From Camelus dromedarius (taxonomy: Eukaryota), in NCBI RefSeq assembly GCF_036321535.1, contig NC_087440.1, forward strand, positions 32,240,001 through 32,304,000: a DNA stretch of 64,000 bases, written 5' to 3'. Each line of letters opens with the position of its first letter. Position 1 is the stretch's first letter. This document shows, piece after piece, positions 9,353 to 50,732 of the stretch. The notes under the pieces are model-generated. The model searched no databases. It saw nothing but the letters and a program-made list of their open reading frames with translations, and was not told the DNA's origin. The translations under genes were made by a program, and so were the position numbers.

Positions 9353-12300
9353 TCAGTCCATCTTGAGGTTAACATAGATATAACGGATGAACTTTAGGGA
9401 AGAAAAAAAGGAGATGGTGCCCAGCATGAGGAAGAAGACATATCCAGTGAGTAAGGAGTAGCCAAAGAACTCTACTGTCTGGACCGCCCCTGACATGTTG
9501 GAGCGCCGAGCATAGTAGAAAACTGAATAGAAGAAGATGAAGAGCCCAGTGGAGCCAACACTCAGCACTGATCGCCACCACCAGCGGTAATCCTCGCCAG
9601 ACAACTGGAAGTAGGTGAGTGCGATGGAGATGCAAGCCCCCACACTCAGCAGGATGGCGAAGACGAAGAAGAGGATGCCATACAAAGTGTACTGCTCCCG
9701 ACCCCATACTGTGGCAAAGATGTAGTAGAGCTCCACAGAGATGGCACTGTGAAGAGAAGACACGATACATACCATTAAAGGGCTGTGCGTTGCCAGCACA
9801 GTGGTCAGGCCAAAATCCAGCCACCACCCCTCCATGTTACTGCATCACTGTGGAAAGTGGGCCCATTCTACTCCCTGCCCTGGAGTTCCTGGCTTGATGG
9901 GAATTCTTTTACCTATGATTAGCTGCTCTCACTTCAAGAACATCTTCAGAAAGTTGAGAGCAGGGATCTTGTCTGTTTTATTTTCCACTGTATTTGCCTG
10001 GCACTAAGAGGTACTCAACAGACTGAGCAATCAAATGAGCTTCAGGCCCCACATGGTGTTGCTAAATTCAGAAACCAGGAAGACGGTGAAAGCAGCAGTG
10101 TCTCTGGAGAGCTTTACAAGTGAGACACCTGATACTTGAACTGATTCAAGCTCAGTCCTGCTTGGAGAAAGGAGGAACCACTTAGTGATCTCTTAATGGT
10201 ATAGCTGAACCAGGGATTATTTCTGACGTTGTGTTAGGGTACAGGGTGAGCACAGAAGGGAAAAGTTAAGGTCAGGAACCTGAAAGTGATGCCATGGAAT
10301 AAAGAGAGGATACCTGAAAGGCAGGAAGCCTCCAACAGTCATGTGGACCAGAGTAGACTTGTACCAGGGCTGGGGCGGAATTTCCCGGGCGATGTTCTTG
10401 GTGCGACAAGGTGCGTCAAAGGGGCTAGCGTTGTTCTTCCCGAAGATGCCTCCAATGACAGTGAGGGGAAAGCCGACCAGCAGCCAAACCGTCAGAAGCA
10501 GCAGGATGGTGGTGGCTGGCAGAGCCTGTGTTGAACCATTGGCCCAATGCACGGAGTTCACCACACTCCACGTGAGGAAGAAAGGCACTGCAGGGATGGG
10601 CCCCCAGAGGGAGGGTCAGCACTGGGAGCTACATGCCTGGACGCACTTAATCAGACTGGACCTAAAGGGGTGAGGAATGAAACATCCTGCTCCCAGGCCA
10701 ACTCCACCCTTTCGTGTCTCATTCCTTGTTCCTTGGCTTACCGAAATCTCCTCACCTATCCATTATCATTATTAAGGATCAAGGCAAGTCGTTACATAAT
10801 GACCTAAGAGTGACACAAATCCACCTGCCTCCAAGGGCCTGTCCTGCTATAGCATTGGAGATTCCTAGTGTGAGACATTCCTTTGAATTAAGGCCGTTTT
10901 CAGAAAGCCCTGGTTCAAACATAAATGTGATGGAATAGAAGACATGTGGGGTTGGAAACACAAAAGGTTCAGATTACAAACTACTACTGCCTTTGAAAGG
11001 ACAAGCTGGCTTGAAAGGCTAGAGTCGGGTAGCCCACTTCCAAAATAAAAAAAGCTAGGGGGCGAAAAGAAAAAGGAGTGTCAAAAAATAAATTCAAGAG
11101 TGTTACTTCAGTGTAATGGTTGAGAATAGAGGCTCTAGAGTTTGACTGCCTAGGTCTGAAACCTCATTTGCTGCTTTTTAGGAGTATAATCTCACGCAAG
11201 TTACCTAACCAGTCTGAAGTTCAACTTCCTCATCTGTAAAATGGGGATAATATTACCTGCTTCCTACAGTCAGTGTGAAGATTAAACGAGATGAAAGCCT
11301 GTCAAGTGTTTATCACATTGCCTAGCACATAGTAAGGGCTTAATAATGTTTATGCAAAAAATGCGTTTCTGTCTTTTCAATGGTTTTCTTATTGTTTCTT
11401 TTGTCTATTTTCATTGCTTTAATCTGACTCTATCTTGGGTTCCACAACGTGTTCTAAGTCCCTGAATCGGCCCNNNNNNNNNNNNNNNNNNNNNNNNNNN
11501 NNNNNNNNNNNNNNNNNNNNNNNNNNNNNNNNNNNNNNNNNNNNNNNNNNNNNNNNNNNNNNNNNNNNNNNNNNNNNNNNNNNNNNNNNNNNNNNNNNNN
11601 NNNNNNNNNNNNNNNNNNNNNNNNNNNNNNNNNNNNNNNNNNNNNNNNNNNNNNNNNNNNNNNNNNNNNNNNNNNNNAATGCCTGCAGGGTGGTAGTGGA
11701 AAGCCCATGTTAGGTCTCCCCTGTCCCTCTTCTGGCAATTTCAGAAGAATCAGCCGCTTTTCTCCCAGACCCAGGGCCTCCAGCAAAACAATATCCCCCA
11801 ATTCTGTTGTCCAGAAAGCCCACAATAGAATATACTCATCCTTGCTAGAGCCATCCCACCCCTTAGGTCTGCCCCTCACCTTGGACAGAAGACAAGATCA
11901 GCATATCTTTTCTGAACAAACCACCTACTTAGTTGTACCCCTTGAGAGANNNNNNNNNNNNNNNNNNNNNNNNNNNNNNNNNNNNNNNNNNNNNNNNNNN
12001 NNNNNNNNNNNNNNNNNNNNNNNNNNNNNNNNNNNNNNNNNNNNNNNNNNNNNNNNNNNNNNNNNNNNNNNNNNNNNNNNNNNNNNNNNNNNNNNNNAGT
12101 CATCACCAGACCCTCCAGAGGTTGTCTCCTCATCCAAGTTGTACCGAGCCAGGTCATTCCGAAGCACACGCATGAGAATGACAGCCACAAAGCCCACCAG
12201 TAAAAACACAAGCACCATGGAATTGATGATGGACAACCAGTGGATTTCCAGTGTTCGGGGAAAGAAACCACCGTCATCACCACGGCGCCTGTCACTCCGA

Positions 12301-13729
12301 CGCTCGACTGAAGTCTCAGACCAGCGCACGCTGTAGGTGTGGGTGAGGCCTAGGAACTCATCAGGTCGTAACCCATCTAAACTGTGGGGCTTGACATCCC
12401 GCACTGAGACATTGGCAAATATAATTCGATCTCTGTGGAATTCTAAGTGGAAGTCCAAATGGGTCCAGAGTCCTATCTTGTGGCTGTGAGGCAGGAAGCC
12501 ACTCTCCTCCATGTAGCCCACAAAGCCCCGGATTGGCAAGTCATCCACCACAAATTCAAAGTAGTAGAGTTCTTCAATGGCCTGGCGCAGCTGTTCCACC
12601 TACAAAAACAAGTCAGGAGTCAGACAGGCCTTGAAAGGCCTCGCCAGGCCTCCCCAGCCACTGGATTTGAGAAGGGTTTCACCTCAGCACTACTGACATT
12701 TTGGGCTGGATAACTTGTGGGGGACTGTCCTGTGCACTGTCAGATGCTCCACCCCTGGCTTCTCACTAGATGTCAGTAGCACCCTCTAATAGAACAAAAA
12801 TATCCCCAGACATTGCCAAAAGTCTCTTGGGAGACAAAACTGCCCCCTGTTGAGAACCAGTGGGTTAGACCCTAGTATGCTGGGATTCTCCGAAATAAGC
12901 AAGTATGACTTGACAGGGTTAAGACCTAGAAAAAGAGAGGCAAGGTGTAAGAAGTTCTGAAGTAGACTAAGGAAAAGTGCCCTAAGATGGGAATCACTGA
13001 AGAAAAAAGCATCACTGGGAAAATTAGGTAGACTGTAAAGGAGACAGTTAAACATGAGCCAAGAGGTAGGAATGGAAAAAAATGACTATGTAGGAGTGGC
13101 AGTTGGCACCTCACTACCAACGGACAAGCTTGGAGTCAGGAGCCCTGGGCTCTACTATCAGCTGTGCAATTTACTATTCATGTCTTGGAAAAGTTACTTC
13201 TGAGCAAGTACGTTTAACAACTGAATGCAAACAATACTATCTGCCCTACCTGCCACGTGGGGTTGTAGTTAGAATCAAATCAAATCACTTCCATAAAGTT
13301 GCTTTGAAAACTATAAACGTAAGGCACTGTTACTAGTCCCTGGGAGGGAGGGCTAATTCTAGTCAACATGGAGAGGCTGACCTGTGCAGGACTGAGCTGC
13401 ATGTGGCACAGAATTCTCTTCTCCACATTCTCCCGAAAGCGGATCTCGTACAAAGACTCAGCCATCCGATCCCCATCCAGAACTTCACCCAGGCTAAGGC
13501 TTTTGTGGCGTATCTTCTCAGGGCTGCAAACTGGAAGCTGATAGTAGTGGTAAGTCTCCTGAGGGTTGTGGTAAGGTCCCACTTTGTTGACATATAGAAT
13601 GACAGGGTCGCCGGCCTTGTAGTGTGTCACACCTTCCACCCCTGGCTCACGTCCTGTGCCCAGCAGAAGCAGCAGCAGGAGTGGTAACCACCAGCAGCTC
13701 CAACTTCGAGGGTGCCCTAGAACTGTCAT
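9353..13729 (-). CDS. TM9SF1: Transmembrane 9 superfamily member 1 (about 607 aa; exon 3 end and most of exon 4 lie in N gaps)
   Basis: Coding exons 13729-13382 ([24 protein letters not shown] signal peptide), 12599 to inside gap 11950-12097, 11682 to inside gap 11474-11677, 10587-10314, 9746-9353 (ends YIYVNLKMD*). EMP70/nonaspanin motifs such as YHYYQLPVC and [10 protein letters not shown]. Exon 2 acceptor at 13747 leaves a 17-nt UTR; non-coding exon 1 donor at 14274. Confidence 0.95.
11110..11355. mobile_element. MIR SINE fragment in TM9SF1 intron 4
   Basis: MIR core-like text: ctctagagtttgactgcctaggtctgaa...aacttcctcatctgtaaaatggggataat...cctagcacatagtaagggcttaataatg. Confidence 0.7.
11474..11677. 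other. Assembly gap (204 N) covering most of TM9SF1 exon 4
   Basis: Run of N. The cag|GCATT acceptor of exon 4 is visible just before it on the minus strand. Confidence 0.98.
11950..12097. other. Assembly gap (148 N) covering the 3' end of TM9SF1 exon 3
   Basis: Run of N interrupting the ORF after ...SGGSGDD. Confidence 0.98.
12672..12862 (-). mobile_element. MER20 (hAT-Charlie) DNA transposon fossil in TM9SF1 intron 2
   Basis: Reverse complement follows the MER20 consensus: cactggttctcaacagggggcagttttgtc...ggcaatgtctggg...gctactgacatctagtg...tgcacaggacagtcc...ccagcccaaaatgtcagtagtgc. Confidence 0.8.
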
Positions 13730-13949
13730 CCTTAACGCAGCGGAACCTGTTTGGGGGAGTTCTGAGGTTATGGGAACCAGGGATCAAATGACACCCCAGG
13801 TCAGGTCCTTCGAACTGAAGCCTGATGGCTCCAATGCCTCCCCTTGGCCTTTCCGATCCTCCCTGAGGCCACCTCCCCACTGCCACACCACACCATCTCT
13901 CTGGCCCGAACAATGGGCTCCCCCTCTGCTCTAGTCCTCTCAACCTAGG

Positions 13950-15010
13950 GTTCCCCCCTCCGGCAGCCCGCCAGCCCGGGGCCTCCCCGTGCACCCCAGC
14001 TCGTTTCCATGGCAACTCCACGCGGCCTCGCACCTCCGGCACCTTCCCGCGGCAACCCCGAGGTGCTCTCCGCCCGGGAAGGGCTGGCCGAGGAGGCGCC
14101 AGCGGCCTCTGCGGCCCCGTAGCCGCCCTTGCACTCCTGCCGGGGTCTCCCTCAGAGCGGCGCGCTAGCTTGGGACCTGGAGAGGACCTGACGACCGACC
14201 TCCCGAGGGCTGGCCACGGTGGTGCCTGATCGCAGCGGCTGCGGTCACACCGCAAGACACCGCGCCCGGCTCACTTCAGTGCTCCCTGAAGAGCTTTCTA
14301 CCACTGGAGGCCTGGCCCAACTCTGAAGACGCCGCGAGGCGAGGCTCGCCCGTCGCCCCGCGGGGGGCCCTCCCGGCGATCGCTAGGGCAGCTCAGGACA
14401 CGTCAGTCTTACCACTTCCGCCTTCACCCGCCGGGCCCTCAGCTCGGCGGAAAGCTCTTCTGCAGCCTAGAGAGGGCCACTCCCCCGCGGTCTTGGCCGC
14501 TCCGACGCTCGGGTTGCCCCGAGAGGGGCTGCGTTAGAGGCCTGGCTGCGAGGACACAAACTCCCTTTTTTGGGTAAGAGTCGGCGCCGGTCCAGCCGCC
14601 CGTCCCCGGGGAGGTTCCAGTTGGACGTCTGAGAGCAGCGCCCGCTGCGCGCGCCCAGTGACTGCCCAGGACACGGGGCCCCGGGGCGGCTGCGCCCACA
14701 CCTAGAGGACGCCGCAAACGTCTGCCGGCTGAACCAATGGGACTCGCCACCGACTGCCGAGGCCGAGCCCGGAGAGGCGGTTCAAGGCCCCCAACCCGGG
14801 CGGGGGTGAGGCTTTGGGCGTAGCTGTGCTAGGACAGAGTCTGGATCTCACCTCCCTGTTGCTCTGCCAACCATCATGAATGGCCTCCCGCCAAAAACCA
14901 AATATGTAAATGAAATTATTTTCCCAAGGCTCTACTGGAGCCCTCCCTGACCGTATAACGACCGTCTGTATCCGGCGGTAGAGGCAAGCCTGGGCCAGGT
15001 CCGGTGTAGA
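13950..15010 (-). promoter_or_regulatory. CpG island, promoter and non-coding exon 1 of TM9SF1
   Basis: CpG-rich. Donor ctgaa|gtgagc at 14274, ETS CACTTCCG near 14413, RFX X-box 14003-14016, E2F-like TTTTGGCGGGAG (minus) near 14885-14896. Confidence 0.75.
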
Positions 15011-15889
15011 GGAACGCAAGGAGATGGGGTGTTCGCTCTTTTACCCCGTGAGTTGATCAGACTGACACTTTTATTGTTAAATGCAGGTAAAAAAAAATCC
15101 TGACACGCTTTGGTCTCTATGTTTTTATTCTTATTTATCTGTATGTGTTTGGGCATATCTTAATTTGTATTGCAGATTATTGTGGAAAAGTTCACCCTGA
15201 TCTGTCCCAGCTATTTTAAGGGGATCTGCTATTAGGGGAGTTCCCCTGGAGATCAGCCCTTGGCGCATTGACTTCCTTTGGCCACCTGGAAGCAACATGT
15301 AAGGAACCTGACTTAAGGTTCCCTCTTCCCTGGTAAAGAAAGTGGAAAATCACAAGTGGCTTCTGGCCTGAAATGTCCTTCATTTATTCACTTCAGCCCT
15401 CTCTGACCCAACCCTCCTCCCTGGAGGAGGGGGTGAGATTCCAGGAAGTACAGGGTTGAGTTTTTAGACAATCAATTAATTTTGTAATTAGAAAAGTAAC
15501 TTAGAAAATGGCTTTGGAGGAGACTTTTAAGTTACAACCACCTGGTCATTAAAGCCAGAAATCTGGGCCTCTTTCACAATTAACAACCCCCTCCTCCCAT
15601 AAGTTCAGTGCCACCAAGACTTCTCTGCTTTTGTCTCGATTATCCTCCAAATTGCCCTCCATGCTGCCTTGGTTCAGGCCCCATCCCCTCACCTAAATTA
15701 CCGTGGCAGCCATGTTGCTAGTCTCTGGGTCACCTCTTCCCTTGGATCCATGTTACACACTGCAGCTGCAAGGATTTTTTTTTCTTTTCTTTTTAATCTT
15801 AAAGGTGCCCTATTTCCTGCAACAGTGATTTTTTTTTTAACTTTTAGTACAAATTTTAAAAGGTCGCTTTCCATTTACAGCTATTACAA

Positions 15890-16060
15890 AATACTCACTA
15901 TATTCCTCATGTTGTACAATACATCCTTTGCCTGTCTTACACGAATAGTTTGTACCTCCCACTCTCCCAACCCTATACTGCCCCTCTCCTCTCATCCCCA
16001 CCGGTAACCACTGGTTTGTTCTCTCTCTCTGTGAGTCTCCTCCTTTTTGTTATGTTCACA
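15890..16060 (-). mobile_element. LINE-1 3'-end fragment (artiodactyl-type)
   Basis: Reverse complement resembles the L1 3' UTR at 49978-50438 (gactcacagagagagagaacaaaccagtggttaccggtgggg...). Confidence 0.6.
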
Positions 16061-16067
16061 AACTGGC

Positions 16068-16225
16068 AACAGTGGTTCTTAAATCTTGGTGTGCATCAGA
16101 TTCAGTCAGAAACTTGTTAAAAATACAGATACCTGGGTCCCACCAAATTAGGATCTTGGGGAAGGAGGTCACTGGGCATCAGTATTTTTTAACAAGCTCT
16201 AATTTTGATGCAAACCAAAATTTAA
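16068..16225. mobile_element. MER5-like hAT fossil
   Basis: cagtggttcttaaatcttgg...gcatcaga...aacttgttaaaaatacagatacctgggtcccacc...tttttaacaagct. Confidence 0.6.
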
Positions 16226-16806
16226 CCATGAGTACATACAATACCTTGCAGTTCTCAGTAATATGCTCACACTCGGATGTCTCGTGCTAGATTTTAAACG
16301 CTAGCAGCACAGGTGATCTACTGGCCTTATTGGTTACCTTCTTCCAGGACTCAGCACACTGCCTGGCACAGAGTAGGTGCTCAATAAATGTGACTGGTTG
16401 AAATGGACCAGATCCATGGAGGGAGTCTCACCGGATTACAGAGGTGCCTCCAGCAATGAATATGTTCCAAATTGCACTTCCTTCTCAAGCCTTGTGGCCA
16501 GTGGTGGATAGAAGGTGAATTATGATGTGTCAGAACATAGGACCTTGGGGAGTTCCGTAACCAAGAGGAGAAAGAAGTAACAACAGCCAGTAAAGACAGA
16601 AAGAACTGCTTCTCCCTTCTTCCCCCTCCAAGTTCCTAGTGGAGAGCTGAGCCCAGCATCCCAGACTTGTGTGACTACACAGGCGAGCTTCTGAAGACTA
16701 ACTTCACTTTGGTACCCTAGCCTTCAGCAGCTCAAGGCGTTGGCTTTCAGAGCAGACAAGAGGCTTTTAAGTAGCAGAGCTCCCTGCTCTCAGCAAGCCC
16801 AACACC

Positions 16807-18978
16807 ATGGGGAAGGGAGACACCTTGGAAGCAGCACCAACCACCTCGACCTACCGCTCTGTCATGGAGGAGTATGGTTACGAAGTAGGCAAGGTCATTG
16901 GCAATGGCTCCTATGGGACGGTGTATGAGGCTTACTACACAAAGCAGAAGGTCATGGTGGCTGTCAAGATGATCTCAAAGAAGAAGGCCTCTGATGACTA
17001 CCTTAACAAGTTCCTGCCCCGTGAGATACAGGTGGGAAAGGGGGCTAGAGGAGGGAACTGGTACCAAGCTGCTTAAGGCTTTTCAGAAAGGGGTTAAAAG
17101 AGGGTGGAGCCGGAAACCCCCAAACCATAACTGAATGACTCACTGGGCAATAAGGAAAATTACTTGATGTAAATTCAGCCTCCTTCCACCTCACCTCCAG
17201 GCCCTCAGAAAGGAAAAGAGCAAAGCATAAGATTTGTCCCTAGGCTACCAGCCCTCTGGGGTTTGATCCTGTTGCAAAGTTCTAAGAAGGTAGCAGTGAG
17301 TGAGTAGGAGAGGTCTGGGAGTGCAGTCAGGGTTCTCCCTTCCTGGCTTTGATGGGTCCCTCTCCCGGGGCCAGGTGATGAAGGTCCTGCGGCACAAGAA
17401 CCTCATCAACTTCTATCAGGCCATCGAGACCACATCCCGAGTGTACATCATTCTGGAGTTGGCTCAGGGTGGTGATGTCCTTGAGTGGATCCAACGCTAT
17501 GGGGCCTGCTCTGAGCCCCTTGCTGGCAAGTGGTTCTCCCAGATGACCCTGGCCATCGCCTACCTGCACAGCAAGGGCATCGTGCACCGGTGAGGGCGCT
17601 GCCACCTGGACACAGGCCTCTGGGCTCTCAAAGGGGTTTTATGCATATCTCCCATTTTCTGCTCTTTTTTCCTCCCTGACCTCTCTCCTCAGTATCTAGG
17701 CCTATTCATCCACTTTATTTTAATCATCTGGTCAAGAACACTTACTAAGTGCCTACTGTGTGCAGAGCCCTTTGCAAAAAGCAATGGTGAGCACCTAGTG
17801 GTCCTCAGGTACCATCCTCTCTCCTCTTTGGGTTCTGCTCACAACTCCAAGGCTTTCCTCCCTCTGCTCCTGTCCTCATAATGGCCTGTCTCTCCCTCTT
17901 TGCCTTTCATCTCTGGCCCTTCAGCTCCCGGTCTAATACTAAGCCCTCTCCTGACCCCCAGCCTTTCTGCTGCTGGTAGGGACTTAAAGTTGGAGAACCT
18001 GCTGCTGGACAAGCGGGAGAACGTGAAGATATCGGACTTTGGCTTCGCCAAGATGGTGCCTTCTAACCAGCCTGTGCGGAGTAGCCCTTCCTACCGCCAA
18101 CTGAACTGCTTTAGCCACCTCAGCCAGACCTACTGTGGCAGCTTTGCTTATGCGTGCCCGGAGATCTTGCTAGGCCTGCCCTACAACCCTTTCCTGTCTG
18201 ACACCTGGAGCATGGGCGTCATCCTCTACACTCTAGTGGTCGCCCATCTGCCCTTTGATGACACCAATCTGAAGAAGCTGCTGAAAGAGACTCAGAAGGA
18301 GGTCACTTTTCCACCCAACTACCCCATCTCCCAGGAATGCAAGGTGTGGGCTCCCCCAGGGGGGCTGAGGCCTCATGGGTGACCCACGGGGAGGAAATGC
18401 CCAACCTAGACCTCCCAGCCCAGGGGGAGGCTCTCCCCCTACCAGAGCCATCTCGCACCCTCACCCTCCCTTAGAATAGTGGGGAGGGCTTTAGGGCCAA
18501 CCCCTGGGCTCCCACCTTGGATGTGAGTGATAAGCAGGTTTCAGCCTCTATCTGTTTAGGCCAGAAGGGAAATCCTGCAAGGATTCCCCACAGGGCACTC
18601 CTCCTCCCCTTACCCCTCAAGGTGTTAGCTTTCTGAGCAGACGGGAGGCTTTTAAGGGTCAAATCAGGGCCACCCTCCCTTTCACCAGAGTGGTGTGATG
18701 GGCTATCCTGCTTCTTTCTTAGGTCCAGCTGCTCACTGCCTGTGTGGCACAATGGGGGGCCAGCTCAGCCAAGACCTCTCTCTCCCCTGCCCTAGAACCT
18801 GGTCCTCCAGACCCTACGCCAAGCCAGCAAGCGTGCCACCATCCTGGACATCATCAAGGATCCCTGGGTTCTCAAGTTCCAGCCTGAGCAACCCACCCAC
18901 GAGATCAGGCTGCTCGAGGCCATGTGTCAGCCCCCCGGCACCACTAATCATCACCAGTCCTTGGCAGTCAATACCTGA
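16807..18978 (+). CDS. TSSK4: Testis-specific serine/threonine kinase 4, 4 exons, 328 aa
   Basis: Exons 16807-17031, 17375-17589, 17980-18343, 18796-18978 (987 nt). GNGSYG loop, VAVK, HRDLKLEN, DFG, YACPE; starts [13 protein letters not shown]. Poly(A) AATAAA at 19054-19059. Confidence 0.96.
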
Positions 18979-20236
18979 AAGAGGCTGAGGGAGGAGGGGG
19001 CTGAGAGGAGAGCACAGCAGGAGGGTCTGGGGCTAAAAATCTTTTATACCAAAAATAAATCTAATTCTGTTTTAGTTTCATCAGGTGGAGTCAAAGACAT
19101 TCTTTCCTCAGAGGAAGCTTAGCAGGGAACACTGTTGAGGGTAGGAGGTGGATTTCTGCCCAGAGCCTGTAACCAGTCATCTTGATAGCCGTTAAGTCAA
19201 CAGTGTAATTCAGTGTAGCTGGCATGTGGCCTGTTCGGGAGGCGGGGAGGTGTGCTCAGATGAACACCTGCTTTGGGGAAGCTTCGTTATCCTGGCTGAG
19301 TACATGCTCATTATTTTATATCTCTGTGCACTCTAAATGTTCAAGCAGTGGGGCAGAGGCCCTGGTTGCTTTGTTTGGTCACAGCTCTGCCTGTCTGTGG
19401 TTCAAAGAGATGACACTTTGTTTTTTATGAAATGAGTATCCGGATGTATGCAATATCTCAGCTCCTTCCTCCTCCAAATACCACCTTAACCACTACTGAA
19501 ACCATCCCAGTGAATCATGGCCCCTCTCGTTACAGCTCCTACACACAGAAGTGACAGTTCAAACCAAGCCTATTAACTGTGTGTTTTGGAAAAAGGAAAG
19601 CTACTTGCCCCCTTATCCCTGTATTCTCCTTCCCTGTCCTTGAAAAGGGGCTTTGTAAAATGAAAATGGGCGGTAAATCACGGGGCTCTCTTGGCAGAGG
19701 CCCAGTTCGGGGGAAGTGATGAGGGAAGACTCAGGGACAGCTCCACACGGTTCTAGAATGAGTAGCAGATGGCAGTTTCCTGACCCTCGGCACTAGACAA
19801 CTCTAGGAGAAACCGCCTTGGAAGTTGGAGCAGTATCTGCCTGGAACAAGGGGGTTAACATGTTGGAAACTCCCATTTGTCCTCTGCTCCATCTCCCCTT
19901 CATCACTCCCATTATTATTCATTTCTTGAAATGAAGCTCCAAGGACCAGGGGACAAGTTTCAGGTGCACACAAGGCAGTATAAGCACTGGGGTTCCATCT
20001 GCCCAGTTTTATTGGGAACGAGGCATTGTAACTGCTAGCCAAGGGAGCCAGGGCTCCTCCCACACCAAGATCCCTCTTCAGAGTTGAGCCAAGGATCCTT
20101 TTCTCAGGCAGGGTCACGCCACCACCCCCAGCAGGACCTCCCAACCAGGCCACGTTCACGTTCCTCTAGCTGAGCACTTGGCACTTAAGGAAAAGCGAAC
20201 AACAAAGGCAGCATCGGGTAGACAAGCCCAGACTCA

Positions 20237-23200
20237 TCAGGATACCCACTCGGCCAACTGCTTTAGTGCTTCTTCATCTTCATCCGCTTTGGGAGCTTTG
20301 GGGACAAGGACACCCAGAGAAAGAAAGAAGTGTTAAGGCTCAGCAACTTCCAACCACTCCCTGCTCTAAGGCTCAGAGCTGGCGGAATTCTCTCTCCTGG
20401 CAAAGAACCTAAGGGTGTGGCCTTGCTGGGCTGCTGCTGATCCCCACAGCACCTTTGCGCAAATTGGAAGGGGACTCTTTCTCCCACAATTTGCAGCCCT
20501 AAACCAGGGAATACAGCTTGCTGAGTGGAGCGCAGACCTGATTTCAGTCTCCATTACCCTTCAGTCAGGTGCCCTTATGCAGTCAACAACCCTGTGCAAC
20601 TCTAGCAGCCACCCTTTCTGCCTGGATCCTCTGAGGCAGGAAGGATGAGAAATAACTTTTCCCCATATCTGTCCCAACCTCTCAAGTCCTTGAGATGACA
20701 GAACAGCCTCAGGTACCTGGCACTGCAGGCAGGTGTGTGGAGGGTACACTGGGCAGCGTGACTGGGGGTTCTTCCTCCTTGTCGCCCACATGTAACAACT
20801 CTCGGGCCAATTCCTCCTGCTCCAGTTCCTCTAGCTCCTCCAACAGTTCATCCTGGATATGGGATGACAAGACCATTCAAGAAGGAGAAAGGAAAATTCT
20901 ACTTCCAAAAATGTACTACTTTTGGAGTACCCCCCAACTTGCCCCACAATTCTCTCGGGCATTCCTTCTGGCTGGTCCCATGCCTTCTCCAGTACTCCCT
21001 GATCCCCTCACTCCCAGTCACCTCATCCACATCATCTCCAAAGCCCACGGGCCGAGAAATGGCATCTGAGATCTGCTGGGCCACCTCCTGTTGTTCTGTG
21101 ATGTCAGCCATCAGTTCATCCACCTTGTCAATGTCCCTGAGAACAGGATACATAGCCCAGAAATCAGGTAACAACGCCCCTGACCTTTTCATCTCACATG
21201 AATGAAGCCTCTCCTGCCTGTGGCTTCAGACTGATAAATCCATGGCTACCAGGTAAGAGATCTCTGGAAAGATATAAAGAGGCAAGTCTGGGCTAAAAGA
21301 TGACAAGAGGACAGGCTGCTCTCTCTTCACTGAAGGATCTTTCAAAATGAGGAAAATCATCTTTCCTCCCTAGAATGCCCCAGCCAGCAAAGAGATCGTC
21401 TTGCAACAAGCAAGGAGGCTGACAGAGGTCTAGGCATCACAGGCATCTCTACTGTAAATTCACATTAGAAGAGGTTTTAGTACCACAAGCTACTCTCCCC
21501 AGTGCCTGGGCCCCCTCCTCCCATCCCCCCGTACCCACATGTCCTGGTAGGCCTTCTTCATGCCTCGGGCAGCAAGCTCCATGGTACGAAGCACTTCTGC
21601 ATTGGTGGTAGCATTCTCAATGGCCTCACGCTGAAACTCCAGGGTGGATAATGTCCCGTCGGTTTGTGCCAGCTGCTGTTCCAACCTTTTCTTTCTCCGC
21701 AAAGCCTGTAGGGCAGCTGACCCAGTCCACACCCTGAACATCAGAGCTGGAAGCCCCTGCTTCCCACCTGGGCCCTCCCAATTGGTGCCTCTTCCCCATT
21801 ACCTCTCTTATTCTTGGTCCCATGCTTCTTGGCGGTTTGTAGCTCCTGCTGAATCTTCTGCTCCAGAAACTCCTGTTTCTTGATCAGTATCTTCTCCGTC
21901 TCCTTCAGTTTCTGTATTGCTTCTTCAGGGGTTGGCCCCTTCTCCTTTTTCCCTGGAGTCCAGTGGAGCAGCCCACATTGTATGAAGGAAAAATATTAGC
22001 CAGCAATCACTGAGCGCATAGTACATGCTATGCACTTGACTGTTATTATTAACCCGCAAATGACTTTCGACAATGAATATACCATCTCCACTTTACAAAT
22101 GTGAAAACAGGCACAAAGATGTTAACATTTTTGTCTAAAACCACAACCAGTAAGAGATTGCACAGGAAATGAAGAGTGGCAGTATGACTTCCAAAGCCAG
22201 TATTCTTTTGCTATTTCAGCCTACCTTTCAAGTCATTCCCCATCTTTTTTTTTTTATTCTTTTTTTTTTTTTTGGTTCACAGCAAACTGAGTAGAAGATA
22301 CAAAGACTTCACATATACTGCCTGCACCCACACATACATAACCTCTTCACGATCATGTCCCTCACCAGAGTTCAGTCACTTTTATAATCACCGTTCCACT
22401 TGCTATCCTAAGAGATATTCAAGGTCTTGATTCCACAGGCTCAAACTGAACAAAGTACAGGGGGCTAGAGAAAAAAAAATATGATCTCAATTTTTCCATT
22501 CATCTTCTGCACTTCTAACAGACTTATTTAAAACAAAAAATCTGATCAAGGTCCTTCAGACCTGGCCCTGTTTACCTCTCCATCCACACTTCTAGTTCCC
22601 TCTTCTTTTGGTACATGCACACGCACATGCACACACACACCTGTACACAGGCACACACACACACTCACTCGCAAGGCAGCCAGAACTTCTCATTTCCCTA
22701 AATACACCACACTTTTTCCTGCCTCTGTTTTGCACAGATACCTCTGCACGGAGCACCTCAATACCCAACCTGGCATACTTCTAGCTTTTTGGATCATCAC
22801 CTGCCACGCCTGCATGTTCAGTGCGCCCCTGGTTTTTAGGAGACTCTCCATCATGGAGTTGCTACACTACACTGCAAATGCCAACTTTGCTTGTCTTCCC
22901 CCACCACGTAGGCAGATTGCCAGAAGATTGCCAGCTGGGATTGCCTGTGGTCCAGGATAAAGTAAGCACCAGTATTCTGGACAGGGCTGGATGCCAGAAA
23001 CTCGCCCCCCAAGTCTAAACAGTGGGAGCCAGCACAGTCGCCACGCCCTCCACTCTCCTCCCCTCCGGGGCCTCGAACTCTTCCCTCGAGGGTGGGGGAA
23101 AGAAGGCAGACGGAGCCTGACAAGGCGGCGCCTCCTGGCCCGGGACAAGGCCTCACTGGGCCTTCGGGGTTTGCGGGACAGCATCTCCCAGGTCTCTCCC

Positions 23201-23280
23201 CGCCCCCTGCGGCCAGCACCTCCCGGTGACCAGTCTCGCCCGGGCTCACCCCTCCCGAAGAGTCGGCCGAGACCACTCAT
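20237..23280 (-). CDS. CHMP4A: Charged multivesicular body protein 4a (Snf7/ESCRT-III), 6 exons, 222 aa
   Basis: Exons 23280-23250, 21952-21803, 21716-21539, 21136-21022, 20852-20717, 20295-20237 (669 nt). MSGLGRLFGRGKKEKGPTPEEAIQKL...EALKQLAEWVS*. Poly(A) signal TTTATT at 20008-20013. Confidence 0.96.
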
Positions 23281-23520
23281 CGCGACCCTCGCCTCTCCCG
23301 CCTCCGCCCCACGGCCGCCCGCGCGCTTCCGCCTCGCTCCCGGGAGGGCGGGGCTCACGACTTCGAGACCCGCCTCGGCCAATCCCTCCTTGGGCACCGC
23401 GGCGACATCATCAACCAGCGCTAGCGAGGCCACTGCTATCACGTGTGAGACACCAGCCTCAAAGCCACGTGCTCCTCTTAAAGCGGCAGCTGGGTTTCCC
23501 ACGACATAAAGGGCCGCCCA
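23000..23520 (-). promoter_or_regulatory. CpG-island promoter of CHMP4A
   Basis: GC box gggcggggc near 23346, CCAAT near 23379, two CACGTG E-boxes (23440-23445, 23465-23470). Confidence 0.7.
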
Positions 23521-23915
23521 ACCCCCACCCCAAAACAAAGTCTTTGTTTCCTGGAGGTTAATGTGCCAGGTAATGCAGCCCACTGCTTGGGGCCAGTGGA
23601 AGAGTTCTTCACGCCCTTGACAGAGCTCCGGAGAGGGGTGGGGATGGGTGGGTACAAAGCGATCATGTTCTTGGGTTTGCCACAAGTTCATAAGGCAGGA
23701 CCTGATGCGGTCTAACGCGTCACACTGCAGTCCTGGTACCTCCCAGTCGCCCACCCCAGGTCACAGTCTAGAAAAAGCAGAAACAACCCACACTGGCTAG
23801 ATCTCTTCTGTCACACAGAAATTCACTTTAATAATTTACAAATGCACCTGAAAATGCCCTCCTGGTGTTCTTGCGGTTCTGTGCCTCAAATGAGGTTCAT
23901 TCACAGGATTGGACT

Positions 23916-25488
<1,573 letters not shown>

Positions 25489-26291
25489 TCACCAACTGAG
25501 ACCTAAAGTGACCCATCATAGCTTGTCACTCCTCACTCCACCTTTCTCCTTATCAGCCTCTCCACCAAAGTATAGAACCCAGAGCCCTCAGCAATATTCC
25601 AGCCATAAAAGAATGTAGTGCCTGCAAAGTCCTTGCGGCCTTTCTTGAACCAGGCTCAACTGCCCAGTAGGGTCACAATGGGAGAGAATTCACTCCCCTA
25701 GTTTCTACCATCCATGTCAGTAGTATGCTGATAGGTATGTAACAGCCAATTTGGGGAGAAGGACTGATCTGTACTGTTTGTTGACTTATATTTCTACCAT
25801 GGCCAATTTTAAGCTACCAACATGAAGTCACTTAATATGGGGTTGAGAAGAAAGGCCAACAGTTAGCTCTGGAGTCAGTCAGAGAGTAGGCTTTCTTAGA
25901 GTCTGATAACCCCTCTAGGGGCACATTTCCTTCCACAGTCCTACTCCTTCAGCCTGGTGTAACTGTGTGTGCCTGGGTCCATTTTGATTTCAGTCACATT
26001 TGTACAATGGAAGAAAGATTCCAGGGAGCCAGGAAATATTTTATTGACAACCAGGGACATAGCCATAAGAGAGGGAAGCACACAGGACTGCAAACTAAAA
26101 CCCAACAGCCAGCAAGGGCCCTTTGGGCTAGGAACACTGCATCCTGGGGTCCTCACAGTCTCCCACCAACAGACACACACGACTGGGCATCCAGGAGAGG
26201 GGGCAGTGGCTCTGGTGTCCCACAGAGTGCGAGGATATATGATGCCTCATTATGAGCGACAGGGTACGGAGGTAAAATGGAGGGGGGTCCA

Positions 26292-35076
<8,785 letters not shown>

Positions 35077-47181: not shown

Positions 47182-47310
47182 TTTTTTTTTTTAATACTTT
47201 AAAAAGTTTTAATTTAATTTATTTCCCTTAACAGAGGCCCTGGGGATTGAACCCAGGACCTTGTGAATGCCAAGCACACACTCTACCACTGAGCTACACC
47301 ACCTACCCCC
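47182..47310 (-). mobile_element. tRNA-derived SINE (camelid Vic-1-like) with 14-bp target-site duplication
   Basis: Reverse complement GGGGTAGGTGGTGTAGCTCAGTGGTAGAG...GGTTCAATCCCCAG (A and B boxes) plus A-rich tail. TSD agaatgtatcttgt (47168-47181) / agaatatatcttgt (47311-47324). Confidence 0.85.
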
Positions 47311-50596: not shown

Positions 50597-50732
50597 GGGG
50601 GGAGGGTATAGCTCAGTGGTAGAGTGCATGCTTAGCATGTGTGAAGTCCTGTTTCAATCCCCAGTACCTCCATAAAGAAATAAATAAACAAGAAAACCTA
50701 ACTATCTCCCCCCTGAAGCAAACAAAGTGCAA
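50597..50732 (+). mobile_element. tRNA-derived SINE (camelid Vic-1-like) with perfect 14-bp TSD
   Basis: GGGGGGAGGGTATAGCTCAGTGGTAGAGTGCATGCTTAGCATG...TTTCAATCCCCAGTACCTCC plus tail aaacctaactatctcccccc. TSD aagaaacaagaaga at 50583-50596 and 50733-50746. Confidence 0.88.

What the first reader, a model, noticed from the sequence alone, without database searches (positions are those of the whole stretch)
9353..35076. Same-strand gene train that can be spliced into one in-frame NEDD8-MDP1-CHMP4A-TM9SF1 ORF
Five minus-strand genes are packed with only about 0.3-0.8 kb between poly(A) signal and the next start (NEDD8>MDP1, MDP1>CHMP4A, TM9SF1>IPO4). Using only native splice sites, NEDD8 e1-3 (149 nt) + MDP1 e3-5 (305) + CHMP4A e2-5 (579) + TM9SF1 e2-6 (17 + about 1824) = about 2874 nt, a stop-free ORF of about 957 aa. 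The TM9SF1 total assumes human-like lengths inside the gaps. The product would join a truncated Ubl, a partial HAD domain, an ESCRT-III core and a nonaspanin. Only 2 of the 4 simplest penultimate-exon to exon-2 joins are in frame (about 1.3 expected by chance), so phase alone proves nothing.
Basis: inference. Interest (0 to 1): 0.7.

Follow-up and report, generated by a model that had tools for sequence, protein, structure and literature searches.

The report
Known read-through gene cluster, in frame
This is the camel copy of the tightly packed NEDD8-MDP1-CHMP4A-TM9SF1 gene cluster: neighbouring genes here are already known or annotated to be spliced together pairwise, so the four-gene reading frame is real arithmetic but no better than chance and has no evidence of a product.

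Summary
The exon arithmetic holds. NEDD8 e1-3 (149 nt) + MDP1 e3-5 (305) + CHMP4A e2-5 (579) + 17 nt of TM9SF1 5'UTR put the TM9SF1 ATG in frame. The chimera is stop-free for 633 codons, up to the first assembly gap.

The rest cannot be verified. Each gap swallows an exon-intron boundary: the end of TM9SF1 e3, and nearly all of e4.

The train is not new biology.
- Junction 1 is exactly the curated human NEDD8-MDP1 isoform 1 join (KQ-I-DGTVRD).
- Junction 3 is exactly the 815/816-aa CHMP4A-TM9SF1 protein filed for human (B7Z6C9), monkeys, cetaceans, sloth, bat and others.
- Camel RefSeq MDP1 isoform X1 already splices into the CHMP4A exon 2 acceptor, but from another donor and out of frame.
- Three-gene models exist in squirrel and desman. 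I found no four-gene model and no model joining NEDD8 to CHMP4A.

Chance explains the phases. 31 of 300 native-site chains are stop-free.

Verdict: ordinary conjoined-gene (cis-SAGe) locus, low interest.

The parts
26292..35076 (-). NEDD8 coding exons: e1 35076-35059 (18 nt), e2 27299-27252 (48), e3 27083-27001 (83, ends in phase 2), e4 26388-26292. AATAAA at 26045.
   Evidence: Assembled to an 81-aa ORF with GT-AG borders. Poly(A) signal.
23916..25201 (-). MDP1 coding exons: e1 25201-25165, e2 25051-24991, e3 24919-24809, e4 24470-24363, e5 24267-24182, e6 24007-23916. e3-5 = 305 nt. ATTAAA at 23832.
   Evidence: 164-aa ORF. e3 is 100% identical to Camelus and Vicugna MDP1 models.
23847..24172 (-). 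Alternative MDP1 donors used by camel RefSeq read-through models: e5 +10 donor (exon ends 24172), and a donor inside e6 (exon ends 23848, GT at 23847-23846), 13 nt upstream of the poly(A) hexamer.
   Evidence: P0076 (206 aa) and P0002 (198 aa) are reproduced exactly from the window with these sites.
20237..23280 (-). CHMP4A coding exons: e1 23280-23250 (31 nt), e2 21952-21803, e3 21716-21539, e4 21136-21022, e5 20852-20717 (ends in phase 1), e6 20295-20237. e2-5 = 579 nt. AATAAA at 20013.
   Evidence: 222-aa ORF. Snf7 hits on e2, e4 and e5.
16807..18975 (+). TSSK4-like protein kinase gene on the opposite strand, inside the would-be CHMP4A>TM9SF1 intron. The end coordinate is approximate.
   Evidence: ORFs. 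Pkinase hit, E 4e-22.
13382..13746 (-). TM9SF1 exon 2: acceptor at 13746, 17 nt of 5'UTR, ATG at 13729, donor after 13382. In the fused frame the UTR reads as the linker G-S-A-A-L-R.
   Evidence: The same 17-nt spacing is seen in three other mammalian contigs, and a 6-residue linker in 21 annotated fusion proteins.
9353..12599 (-). TM9SF1 e3 (12599 to gap 1), e4 (11682 to gap 2, 5 nt visible), e5 10587-10314, e6 9746-9353 (stop). Assembly gaps at 11950-12097 and 11474-11677.
   Evidence: EMP70 profile coverage is 62-234, then 342-429 and 431-516.

Best explanation
The window is the Camelus ortholog of the compact same-strand cluster NEDD8 > MDP1 > CHMP4A > (TSSK4 antisense) > TM9SF1 > IPO4.

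In such clusters RNA polymerase II sometimes fails to terminate at the upstream poly(A) site. The spliceosome then joins an upstream donor to the first acceptor it meets downstream, usually exon 2. The donor is usually that of the second-to-last exon, or one inside the last exon. These are conjoined genes, also called cis-SAGe (cis-splicing of adjacent genes).

Each neighbouring pair here does this, or is modelled as doing it. NEDD8-MDP1 and CHMP4A-TM9SF1 are in-frame fusions already on file in other mammals. MDP1>CHMP4A e2 is in the camel RefSeq models, out of frame.

The three joins can be concatenated into one frame because the intron phases happen to match (2/2, 1/1, 1/1). Those phases are kept for each gene's own coding needs. 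The 17-nt leader is short and sits between an acceptor and a start codon.

Shown: exon structure, phases, the stop-free frame to gap 1, and identity of junctions 1 and 3 to public models.
Inferred: the read-through mechanism in camel, and that a four-gene mRNA, if made at all, is a very rare by-product without a dedicated function.
For: - Exon models and the 633-codon open chimera.
- Junction 1 peptide is identical to human NEDD8-MDP1 isoform 1 (P0056). The same join appears in macaque, ground squirrel, hamster, takin and galago models.
- Junction 3 with its 6-residue linker is identical in form to the 815/816-aa proteins of human (B7Z6C9/BAH13215.1), Cercopithecinae (F7EHH2), dolphins, sperm whale, golden mole, elephant shrew, sloth, lynx, muntjac and Myotis.
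- The camel prediction is 97.6% identical to dolphin P0382 over 492 aa.
- Camel RefSeq MDP1 isoform X1 is reproduced exactly from the window by joining donor 23847 to the CHMP4A e2 acceptor 21952.
- Chance tests: 31 of 300 native-site chains are stop-free.
- Literature, PMC2953495: the commonest conjoined pattern skips the upstream terminal exon and the downstream first exon; 8 of 10 random same-strand pairs under 10 kb apart gave conjoined mRNA; 98% of conjoined genes have two parents, 13 have three and 4 have four.
- RNA-labelled runs hold 62-74% of the sampled words of a 5.95-kb stretch that by my exon coordinates is only about a quarter exonic. This is compatible with unspliced or read-through RNA, or with DNA carry-over.
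Against:
- Most public fusion proteins are automatic predictions (Gnomon, Ensembl, submitter pipelines), so they show that predictors accept the joins, not how abundant or translated the products are.
- The naked mole-rat MDP1-CHMP4A model sits on a gap-ridden assembly and is probably an artefact.
- The 17-nt leader keeps its length across at least five placental orders. This could also reflect selection on the fused frame.
Confidence: 0.85

Rival explanations
1. The pairwise fusion proteins (NEDD8-MDP1 and CHMP4A-TM9SF1) are selected, functional products. Their frame compatibility is maintained by selection, and the four-gene frame is a side effect of two or three maintained joins.
For: - Junction 1 is curated in human RefSeq and recurs in primates, rodents and an artiodactyl.
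- The junction 3 linker is always 6 residues and stop-free in primates, cetaceans, a bat, a sloth, a squirrel, a muntjac and the camel.
- A human 815-aa entry carries a BAH accession. From my own knowledge these come from full-length cDNA projects.
- Four of six variable leader sites fall at third codon positions (my binomial p is about 0.1).
Against: - Exon phases are conserved for each parent gene's own sake.
- 17 nt next to a start codon is too short to expect indels.
- The linker residues vary (GSAALR, GSTALR, GSAASR, GPAATR, DSTALR).
- The NEDD8 part lacks the C-terminal third and the Gly-Gly end. The MDP1 part lacks the catalytic DxDxT motif.
- The TM9SF1 signal peptide would sit 209 residues inside the CHMP4A fusion.
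- No literature on function turned up.
Confidence: 0.1
2. A genuine four-gene mRNA encoding a fusion of about 956 aa (truncated NEDD8, partial MDP1, CHMP4A core, TM9SF1) is made in a regulated way, for instance when termination is impaired.
For: - The frame is open as far as it can be read.
- Each junction, or at least its acceptor, is used in some public model.
- Three-gene models exist: squirrel P0454 = MDP1 e1-5 > CHMP4A e3-5 > TM9SF1, and desman P0436 = CHMP4A > TM9SF1 > IPO4.
- Four-gene conjoined transcripts are on record in human, 4 of 751 (PMC2953495).
Against: - No model with NEDD8 plus CHMP4A, and none with all four genes, among proteins holding MDP1 e3 (125-397 aa) or the TM9SF1 N-terminus (320-1017 aa, best 120 rows, which reach past the mammalian score range).
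- Three read-through and exon-skipping events must coincide, and the last crosses 7 kb antisense to TSSK4 and the TM9SF1 promoter.
- The chain needs MDP1 e3 as acceptor instead of e2.
- The camel RefSeq MDP1>CHMP4A join uses another donor and is out of frame.
- TM9SF1 e3/e4 are unread.
- The three-gene models come from submitter pipelines that may merge neighbours.
Confidence: 0.03
3. The apparent train is an assembly artefact: the gaps mark a mis-join, and TM9SF1 is not contiguous with the upstream genes.
For: Two gaps lie inside TM9SF1.
Against: - The exon order e2, e3, e4 acceptor, e5, e6 is colinear, and EMP70 profile coverage increases monotonically across the gaps.
- The neighbour order MDP1, CHMP4A, TSSK4 is repeated in the naked mole-rat locus. 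The adjacency of MDP1, CHMP4A, TM9SF1 and IPO4 is implied by the fusion models of other mammals.
Confidence: 0.02

Closest known systems
NEDD8-MDP1 read-through gene (human RefSeq 'NEDD8-MDP1 protein isoform 1', Ensembl ENSG00000255526)
   Same: Same parent genes, same donor (NEDD8 e3) and acceptor (MDP1 e3), and the same junction peptide KQ-I-DGTVRD. The gene name is used in 19 papers and the Ensembl id is given.
   Different: No camel NEDD8-MDP1 model was among the hits.
CHMP4A-TM9SF1 815/816-aa proteins (human B7Z6C9/BAH13215.1, Cercopithecinae F7EHH2, Tursiops XP_033707152.1 and others). Ensembl ENSG00000254692 (AL136295.1) is probably the human gene model.
   Same: Same donor (CHMP4A e5), same acceptor (TM9SF1 e2), and a 6-residue linker translated from the 17-nt leader. 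The camel linker GSAALR is identical to the dolphin one. ENSG00000254692 is on chr14 minus and its product is called TM9SF1 in a proteomics preprint.
   Different: These start at the CHMP4A ATG, not in NEDD8. That ENSG00000254692 is this read-through model is my recollection and was not verified here.
Conjoined genes / cis-SAGe chimeric RNAs in general (Prakash et al. 2010, PMC2953495; Chwalenia et al. 2017, PMC5704251; Chanfreau 2026, PMC13501980)
   Same: Same-strand neighbours under 10 kb apart, GT-AG joins that skip the upstream terminal exon and the downstream first exon, occasional in-frame chimeric proteins (16% of conjoined genes keep all parental frames), and rare three- and four-parent cases.
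   Different: Here the multi-parent form is only a computed possibility, with no transcript behind it.
Three-gene gene models at this locus: Sciurus carolinensis MBZ3881343.1 (889 aa), Galemys pyrenaicus KAG8509401.1 (1,953 aa)
   Same: They chain MDP1 e5 > CHMP4A e3 > ... e5 > TM9SF1 e2, or CHMP4A > TM9SF1 > IPO4, in one frame. The first is one of the 31 open chains I enumerated.
   Different: They come from submitter annotation pipelines that may simply merge neighbours. Neither includes NEDD8.

Membership tests
Conjoined gene / cis-SAGe read-through chimera | Parent genes adjacent on the same strand, close together | tested here: met
   All four genes plus IPO4 are on the minus strand. Poly(A) signal to next ATG is 844, 552 and 374 nt. 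The CHMP4A signal (20013) to the TM9SF1 e2 acceptor (13746) is 6.3 kb, with TSSK4 antisense in between.
Conjoined gene / cis-SAGe read-through chimera | Joins use canonical splice sites, typically skipping the upstream terminal exon and the downstream first exon | tested here: met
   All donors are GT and all acceptors AG. [quoted passage not shown]
Conjoined gene / cis-SAGe read-through chimera | An actual transcript joins exons of both parents in this organism | tested here: inconclusive
Indirect support only: camel RefSeq MDP1 isoform X1 is reproduced exactly by a MDP1 e6-internal donor > CHMP4A e2 join. Junctions 1 and 3 are seen only in other species' models.
Four-parent conjoined gene | One molecule carrying exons of all four genes | tested here: not met
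   No protein model combines NEDD8 or MDP1 with CHMP4A and TM9SF1 beyond the squirrel three-gene model, and none has all four. There is no chimeric retrocopy in the genome. Reach was limited to annotated or predicted proteins.
NEDD8-MDP1 read-through protein | NEDD8 residues 1-49, then MDP1 from exon 3, in frame | tested here: met
   The predicted camel join gives the same junction peptide as P0056, P0058, P0059, P0045 and P0088.
CHMP4A-TM9SF1 fusion protein (815 aa class) | CHMP4A e1-5, a 6-residue leader-derived linker, then full TM9SF1 | tested here: inconclusive
   The first 492 aa of the camel prediction are 97.6% identical, ungapped, to dolphin P0382, linker included. The part through TM9SF1 e3/e4 is unread because of the gaps.
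Functional ubiquitin-like modifier (NEDD8) | Complete beta-grasp fold and C-terminal Gly-Gly for conjugation | tested here: not met
   The chimera keeps only ubiquitin-profile positions 1-49 of 72 (on P0056) and lacks e4, which carries the LRGG end.
Active HAD phosphatase (MDP1) | Motif I DxDxT with the nucleophile Asp | tested here: not met
   The motif (FDLDYT) straddles e1/e2. The chimera starts at e3, and the Acid_PPase profile is matched only from position 32.

The most novel reading that the evidence does not exclude
Under impaired termination, camel (and other mammalian) cells make a single mRNA running from the NEDD8 promoter to the TM9SF1 poly(A) site. This mRNA uses all three in-frame joins and is translated into a four-part fusion of about 956 aa. 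The conserved 17-nt leader and matching phases would then reflect weak selection to keep such read-through products translatable rather than targets of nonsense-mediated decay.
Probability: 0.03. Interest if true: 0.45.

Novelty: already known. Interest (0 to 1): 0.15.

Why it matters
It matters little as a discovery. It shows that a tool-less reader can rediscover, from phases alone, two read-through fusions that are already in databases (NEDD8-MDP1 and CHMP4A-TM9SF1).

Practically, the locus is a trap for gene predictors. Two- and three-gene merged models are on file for many mammals, and proteomics or expression tables can mis-assign TM9SF1, CHMP4A, MDP1 or NEDD8 signals to the read-through ids.

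If a four-gene molecule were ever seen, it would add one more case to the handful of four-parent conjoined genes reported in human.

Tried and rejected
- **Read laying.** I asked for window 21490-27440 on two raw-read and two contig RNA runs.
- **Literature.** Searches for MDP1-CHMP4A, CHMP4A-TM9SF1 and similar names found nothing.
- **Nematode query.** A homolog search with a nematode TM9SF1 as query reached only invertebrates and was uninformative for mammals.
- **Representative library.** Searching it with TM9SF1 e2 gave only short upstream-extended fragments and no fusion. The fusions hide inside larger clusters.
- **Bat MDP1-CHMP4A model.** It is not on record by contig.
- **Naked mole-rat MDP1-CHMP4A model.** It lies on an assembly missing MDP1 e5-6 and CHMP4A e1-3, so I discount it.
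- **Retrocopy search.** Searching this genome with a NEDD8-MDP1 fusion protein found only the locus itself and ubiquitin genes.
- **Codon-position pattern in the 17-nt leader.** Four of six variable sites are at third positions, p about 0.1, not significant.
- **Assembly mis-join.** Considered and rejected, because the exon order is colinear.
- **Gaps.** I did not use other species' TM9SF1 sequences to fill the gaps.
Full report
**What is there.** The window holds, on the minus strand, NEDD8 (ATG 35076), MDP1 (ATG 25201), CHMP4A (ATG 23280), TM9SF1 (ATG 13729, stop 9353) and the start of IPO4 (ATG 8735). A TSSK4-like kinase gene lies on the plus strand at 16807 to about 18975, between CHMP4A and TM9SF1. 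I fixed every coding exon by anchor strings. All borders are GT-AG, and NEDD8, MDP1 and CHMP4A assemble to intact ORFs of 81, 164 and 222 aa. MDP1 exon 3 and an alternative MDP1 C-terminus are 100% identical to Camelus models. Two Camelus RefSeq isoforms are reproduced exactly from the window, so the genome is a camel.

**Checking the observation.** NEDD8 e1-3 is 18+48+83 = 149 nt. MDP1 e3-5 is 111+108+86 = 305 nt. CHMP4A e2-5 is 150+178+115+136 = 579 nt. There are 17 nt from the TM9SF1 e2 acceptor (13746) to the ATG. The phases match: 2 into 2, 1 into 1, 1 into 1. Concatenated with TM9SF1 e2 and the readable part of e3, the chimera is 1,900 nt, 633 codons, with no stop. The poly(A)-signal-to-next-ATG spacings are 844, 552 and 374 nt.

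**The gaps.** Gap 1 (11950-12097) has e3 coding sequence on one side and sequence with stops in all frames on the other. Gap 2 (11474-11677) begins 5 nt after the e4 acceptor and ends in intron. Both gaps therefore hide an exon-intron border. EMP70 profile positions 235-341 are unread. Continuity of the frame from e3 to e5 cannot be established. It needs a hidden coding length of 1 mod 3, which a 606-codon protein (298 nt) would satisfy. With 606 codons the total would be 2,871 nt and 956 aa.

**Is it more than chance?** No.
- Of the 300 chains that use only native donors and acceptors, 31 are stop-free as far as gap 1.
- The textbook chain (second-to-last exon to exon 2 throughout) is not among them.
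- With random intron phases, about 70% of such four-gene trains allow some native-frame chain.

**What the joins really are.**

*Junction 1.* A search with MDP1 e3 returned human 'NEDD8-MDP1 protein isoform 1' (193 aa). Its join, KQ-I-DGTVRD, is letter for letter the one predicted here. The same join appears in macaque, Arctic ground squirrel, a hamster, takin and galago models. A second in-frame route, from a donor inside NEDD8 e4 after YKIL to MDP1 e2, is filed for orangutan and a singing mouse. The same GT is present in the camel, at 26350.

*Junction 3.* A search with a fish TM9SF1 returned 815/816-aa proteins carrying Snf7 plus EMP70. They come from human (B7Z6C9/BAH13215.1), Cercopithecinae (F7EHH2), gibbon, bonobo, gorilla, capuchin, squirrel monkey, dolphins, pilot whale, sperm whale, golden mole, elephant shrew, sloth, lynx, hyena, muntjac, goat and Myotis. 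In 21 of them the join is CHMP4A e5, a 6-residue linker, then the TM9SF1 Met. The linker variants are GSAALR, as predicted for camel, plus GSTALR, GSAASR, GPAATR and DSTALR. The camel prediction is 97.6% identical to the dolphin protein over its first 492 aa. Three other mammalian contigs also have exactly 17 nt between acceptor and ATG. Human Ensembl carries a second gene id here, ENSG00000254692/AL136295.1 on chr14 minus, whose product a proteomics preprint calls TM9SF1. That it is this read-through model is my recollection only.

*Junction 2.* Camel RefSeq 'MDP1 isoform X1' (XP_031309354.1, 206 aa) is reproduced exactly by MDP1 e1-4, e5 with a +10 donor, e6 up to a donor at 23847 (13 nt before the ATTAAA), and then CHMP4A e2 from its native acceptor 21952. 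It reads CHMP4A e2 out of frame and stops after 15 codons. The CHMP4A e2 acceptor is therefore already modelled as captured by MDP1 transcripts in camels, but not from e5 and not in frame. Two Myotis species have a 343-aa MDP1-CHMP4A model that takes another route.

**Multi-gene models.** A grey squirrel entry of 889 aa chains MDP1 e1-5 > CHMP4A e3-5 > TM9SF1. A desman entry of 1,953 aa chains CHMP4A > TM9SF1 > IPO4. Both come from submitter pipelines and may be merges. I saw no model combining NEDD8 with CHMP4A, and none with four genes. This covers proteins of 125-397 aa holding MDP1 e3 and the TM9SF1 search for proteins of 320-1017 aa. In the latter the listed rows extend beyond the mammalian score range, and the cluster representatives I checked were among the longest members of their clusters. 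A search of this genome with a NEDD8-MDP1 fusion protein found no chimeric retrocopy.

**Mechanism.** The most likely process is transcriptional read-through past a poly(A) site, followed by cis-splicing to the next available acceptor. Prakash et al. (PMC2953495) report several relevant figures:
- The commonest pattern drops the upstream terminal exon and the downstream first exon.
- 8 of 10 randomly chosen same-strand pairs less than 10 kb apart gave conjoined mRNA by RT-PCR.
- 16% of conjoined genes keep all parental frames.
- 98% have two parents, 13 have three and 4 have four.

Reviews link the process to termination efficiency and stress, but not every read-through condition gives chimeric splicing (PMC13501980 and PMC5704251).

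The putative four-part protein looks unfit. The NEDD8 part stops at ubiquitin-profile position 49 of 72 and lacks the Gly-Gly end. The MDP1 part lacks the DxDxT motif of e1/e2. CHMP4A would lose its first 10 residues and its e6 tail. The TM9SF1 signal peptide would sit about 350 residues inside the chain. The last point is inference.

**What I could not do.** There are therefore no split-read counts for camel. RNA-labelled runs hold 62-74% of the sampled words of a 5.95-kb stretch that by my exon coordinates is only about a quarter exonic. This fits unspliced or read-through RNA but equally fits DNA carry-over.

**Verdict.** The arithmetic is right as far as the sequence can be read. The joins are real splice-site pairs. 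Two of them are already annotated in-frame fusions, and the acceptor of the third is used in the camel RefSeq models. The four-gene ORF is an extrapolation at chance level with no supporting molecule. This is an ordinary, already described kind of locus: low interest.

Noticed in passing
window 16807-18975 (+): A TSSK4-like serine/threonine kinase gene lies on the opposite strand between CHMP4A and TM9SF1, convergent with CHMP4A.
   Followed up: partly
window 33475-33585 (-), NEDD8 intron 1: An Rfam mir-544 match (81.9 bits) folds as a hairpin (z = -3.05). It is a dispersed repeat: the first look found 1,184 candidates in this genome, and the 40 scored were 81-88% identical. It is a repeat-derived hairpin, not evidence of a specific miRNA gene.
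   Followed up: yes
window 24172, 23847 and 22464 (-): The MDP1 e5 +10 alternative donor shifts e6 into a frame that reads through the normal stop. A donor 13 nt before the MDP1 ATTAAA then splices either to CHMP4A e2 or to a cryptic exon at 22464 in CHMP4A intron 1. These are camel RefSeq isoforms X1 and X2, reproduced exactly. With the canonical e5 donor the MDP1 stop lies 68 nt upstream of that donor, which would make such read-through mRNAs likely targets of nonsense-mediated decay.
   Followed up: yes
window 26350 (-), inside NEDD8 e4: A GT right after the codons for YKIL gives phase 1 and would join MDP1 e2 in frame. This second NEDD8-MDP1 route is filed for orangutan and Scotinomys (P0042, P0013).
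   Followed up: partly
window 13730-13746 (-) and loci L002, L003, L004: In four mammals the TM9SF1 leader is always 17 nt. Four of its six variable sites are third positions of the frame shared with the ATG (my binomial p about 0.1), which is not significant. The frame continues open upstream of the acceptor in several species, which is why short upstream-extended 'proteins' are on file.
   Followed up: partly
L001 (naked mole-rat, GCA_000230445.1 JH168072.1): The 189-aa 'CHMP4A' model that fuses MDP1 e3-4 to CHMP4A e4-6 sits on a stretch with 3,504 N. tblastn finds no MDP1 e5-6 or CHMP4A e1-3 there, so it is probably a gap-induced merge.
   Followed up: yes
window 47232-47303 (-) and 50602-50672 (+): Two weak tRNA-model matches (45.4 and 30.9 bits). 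They are possibly tRNA-derived SINE heads or pseudogenes.
   Followed up: no
window 26389-26430 (-): A run of about 28 T directly upstream of the NEDD8 e4 acceptor, an unusually long polypyrimidine tract.
   Followed up: no
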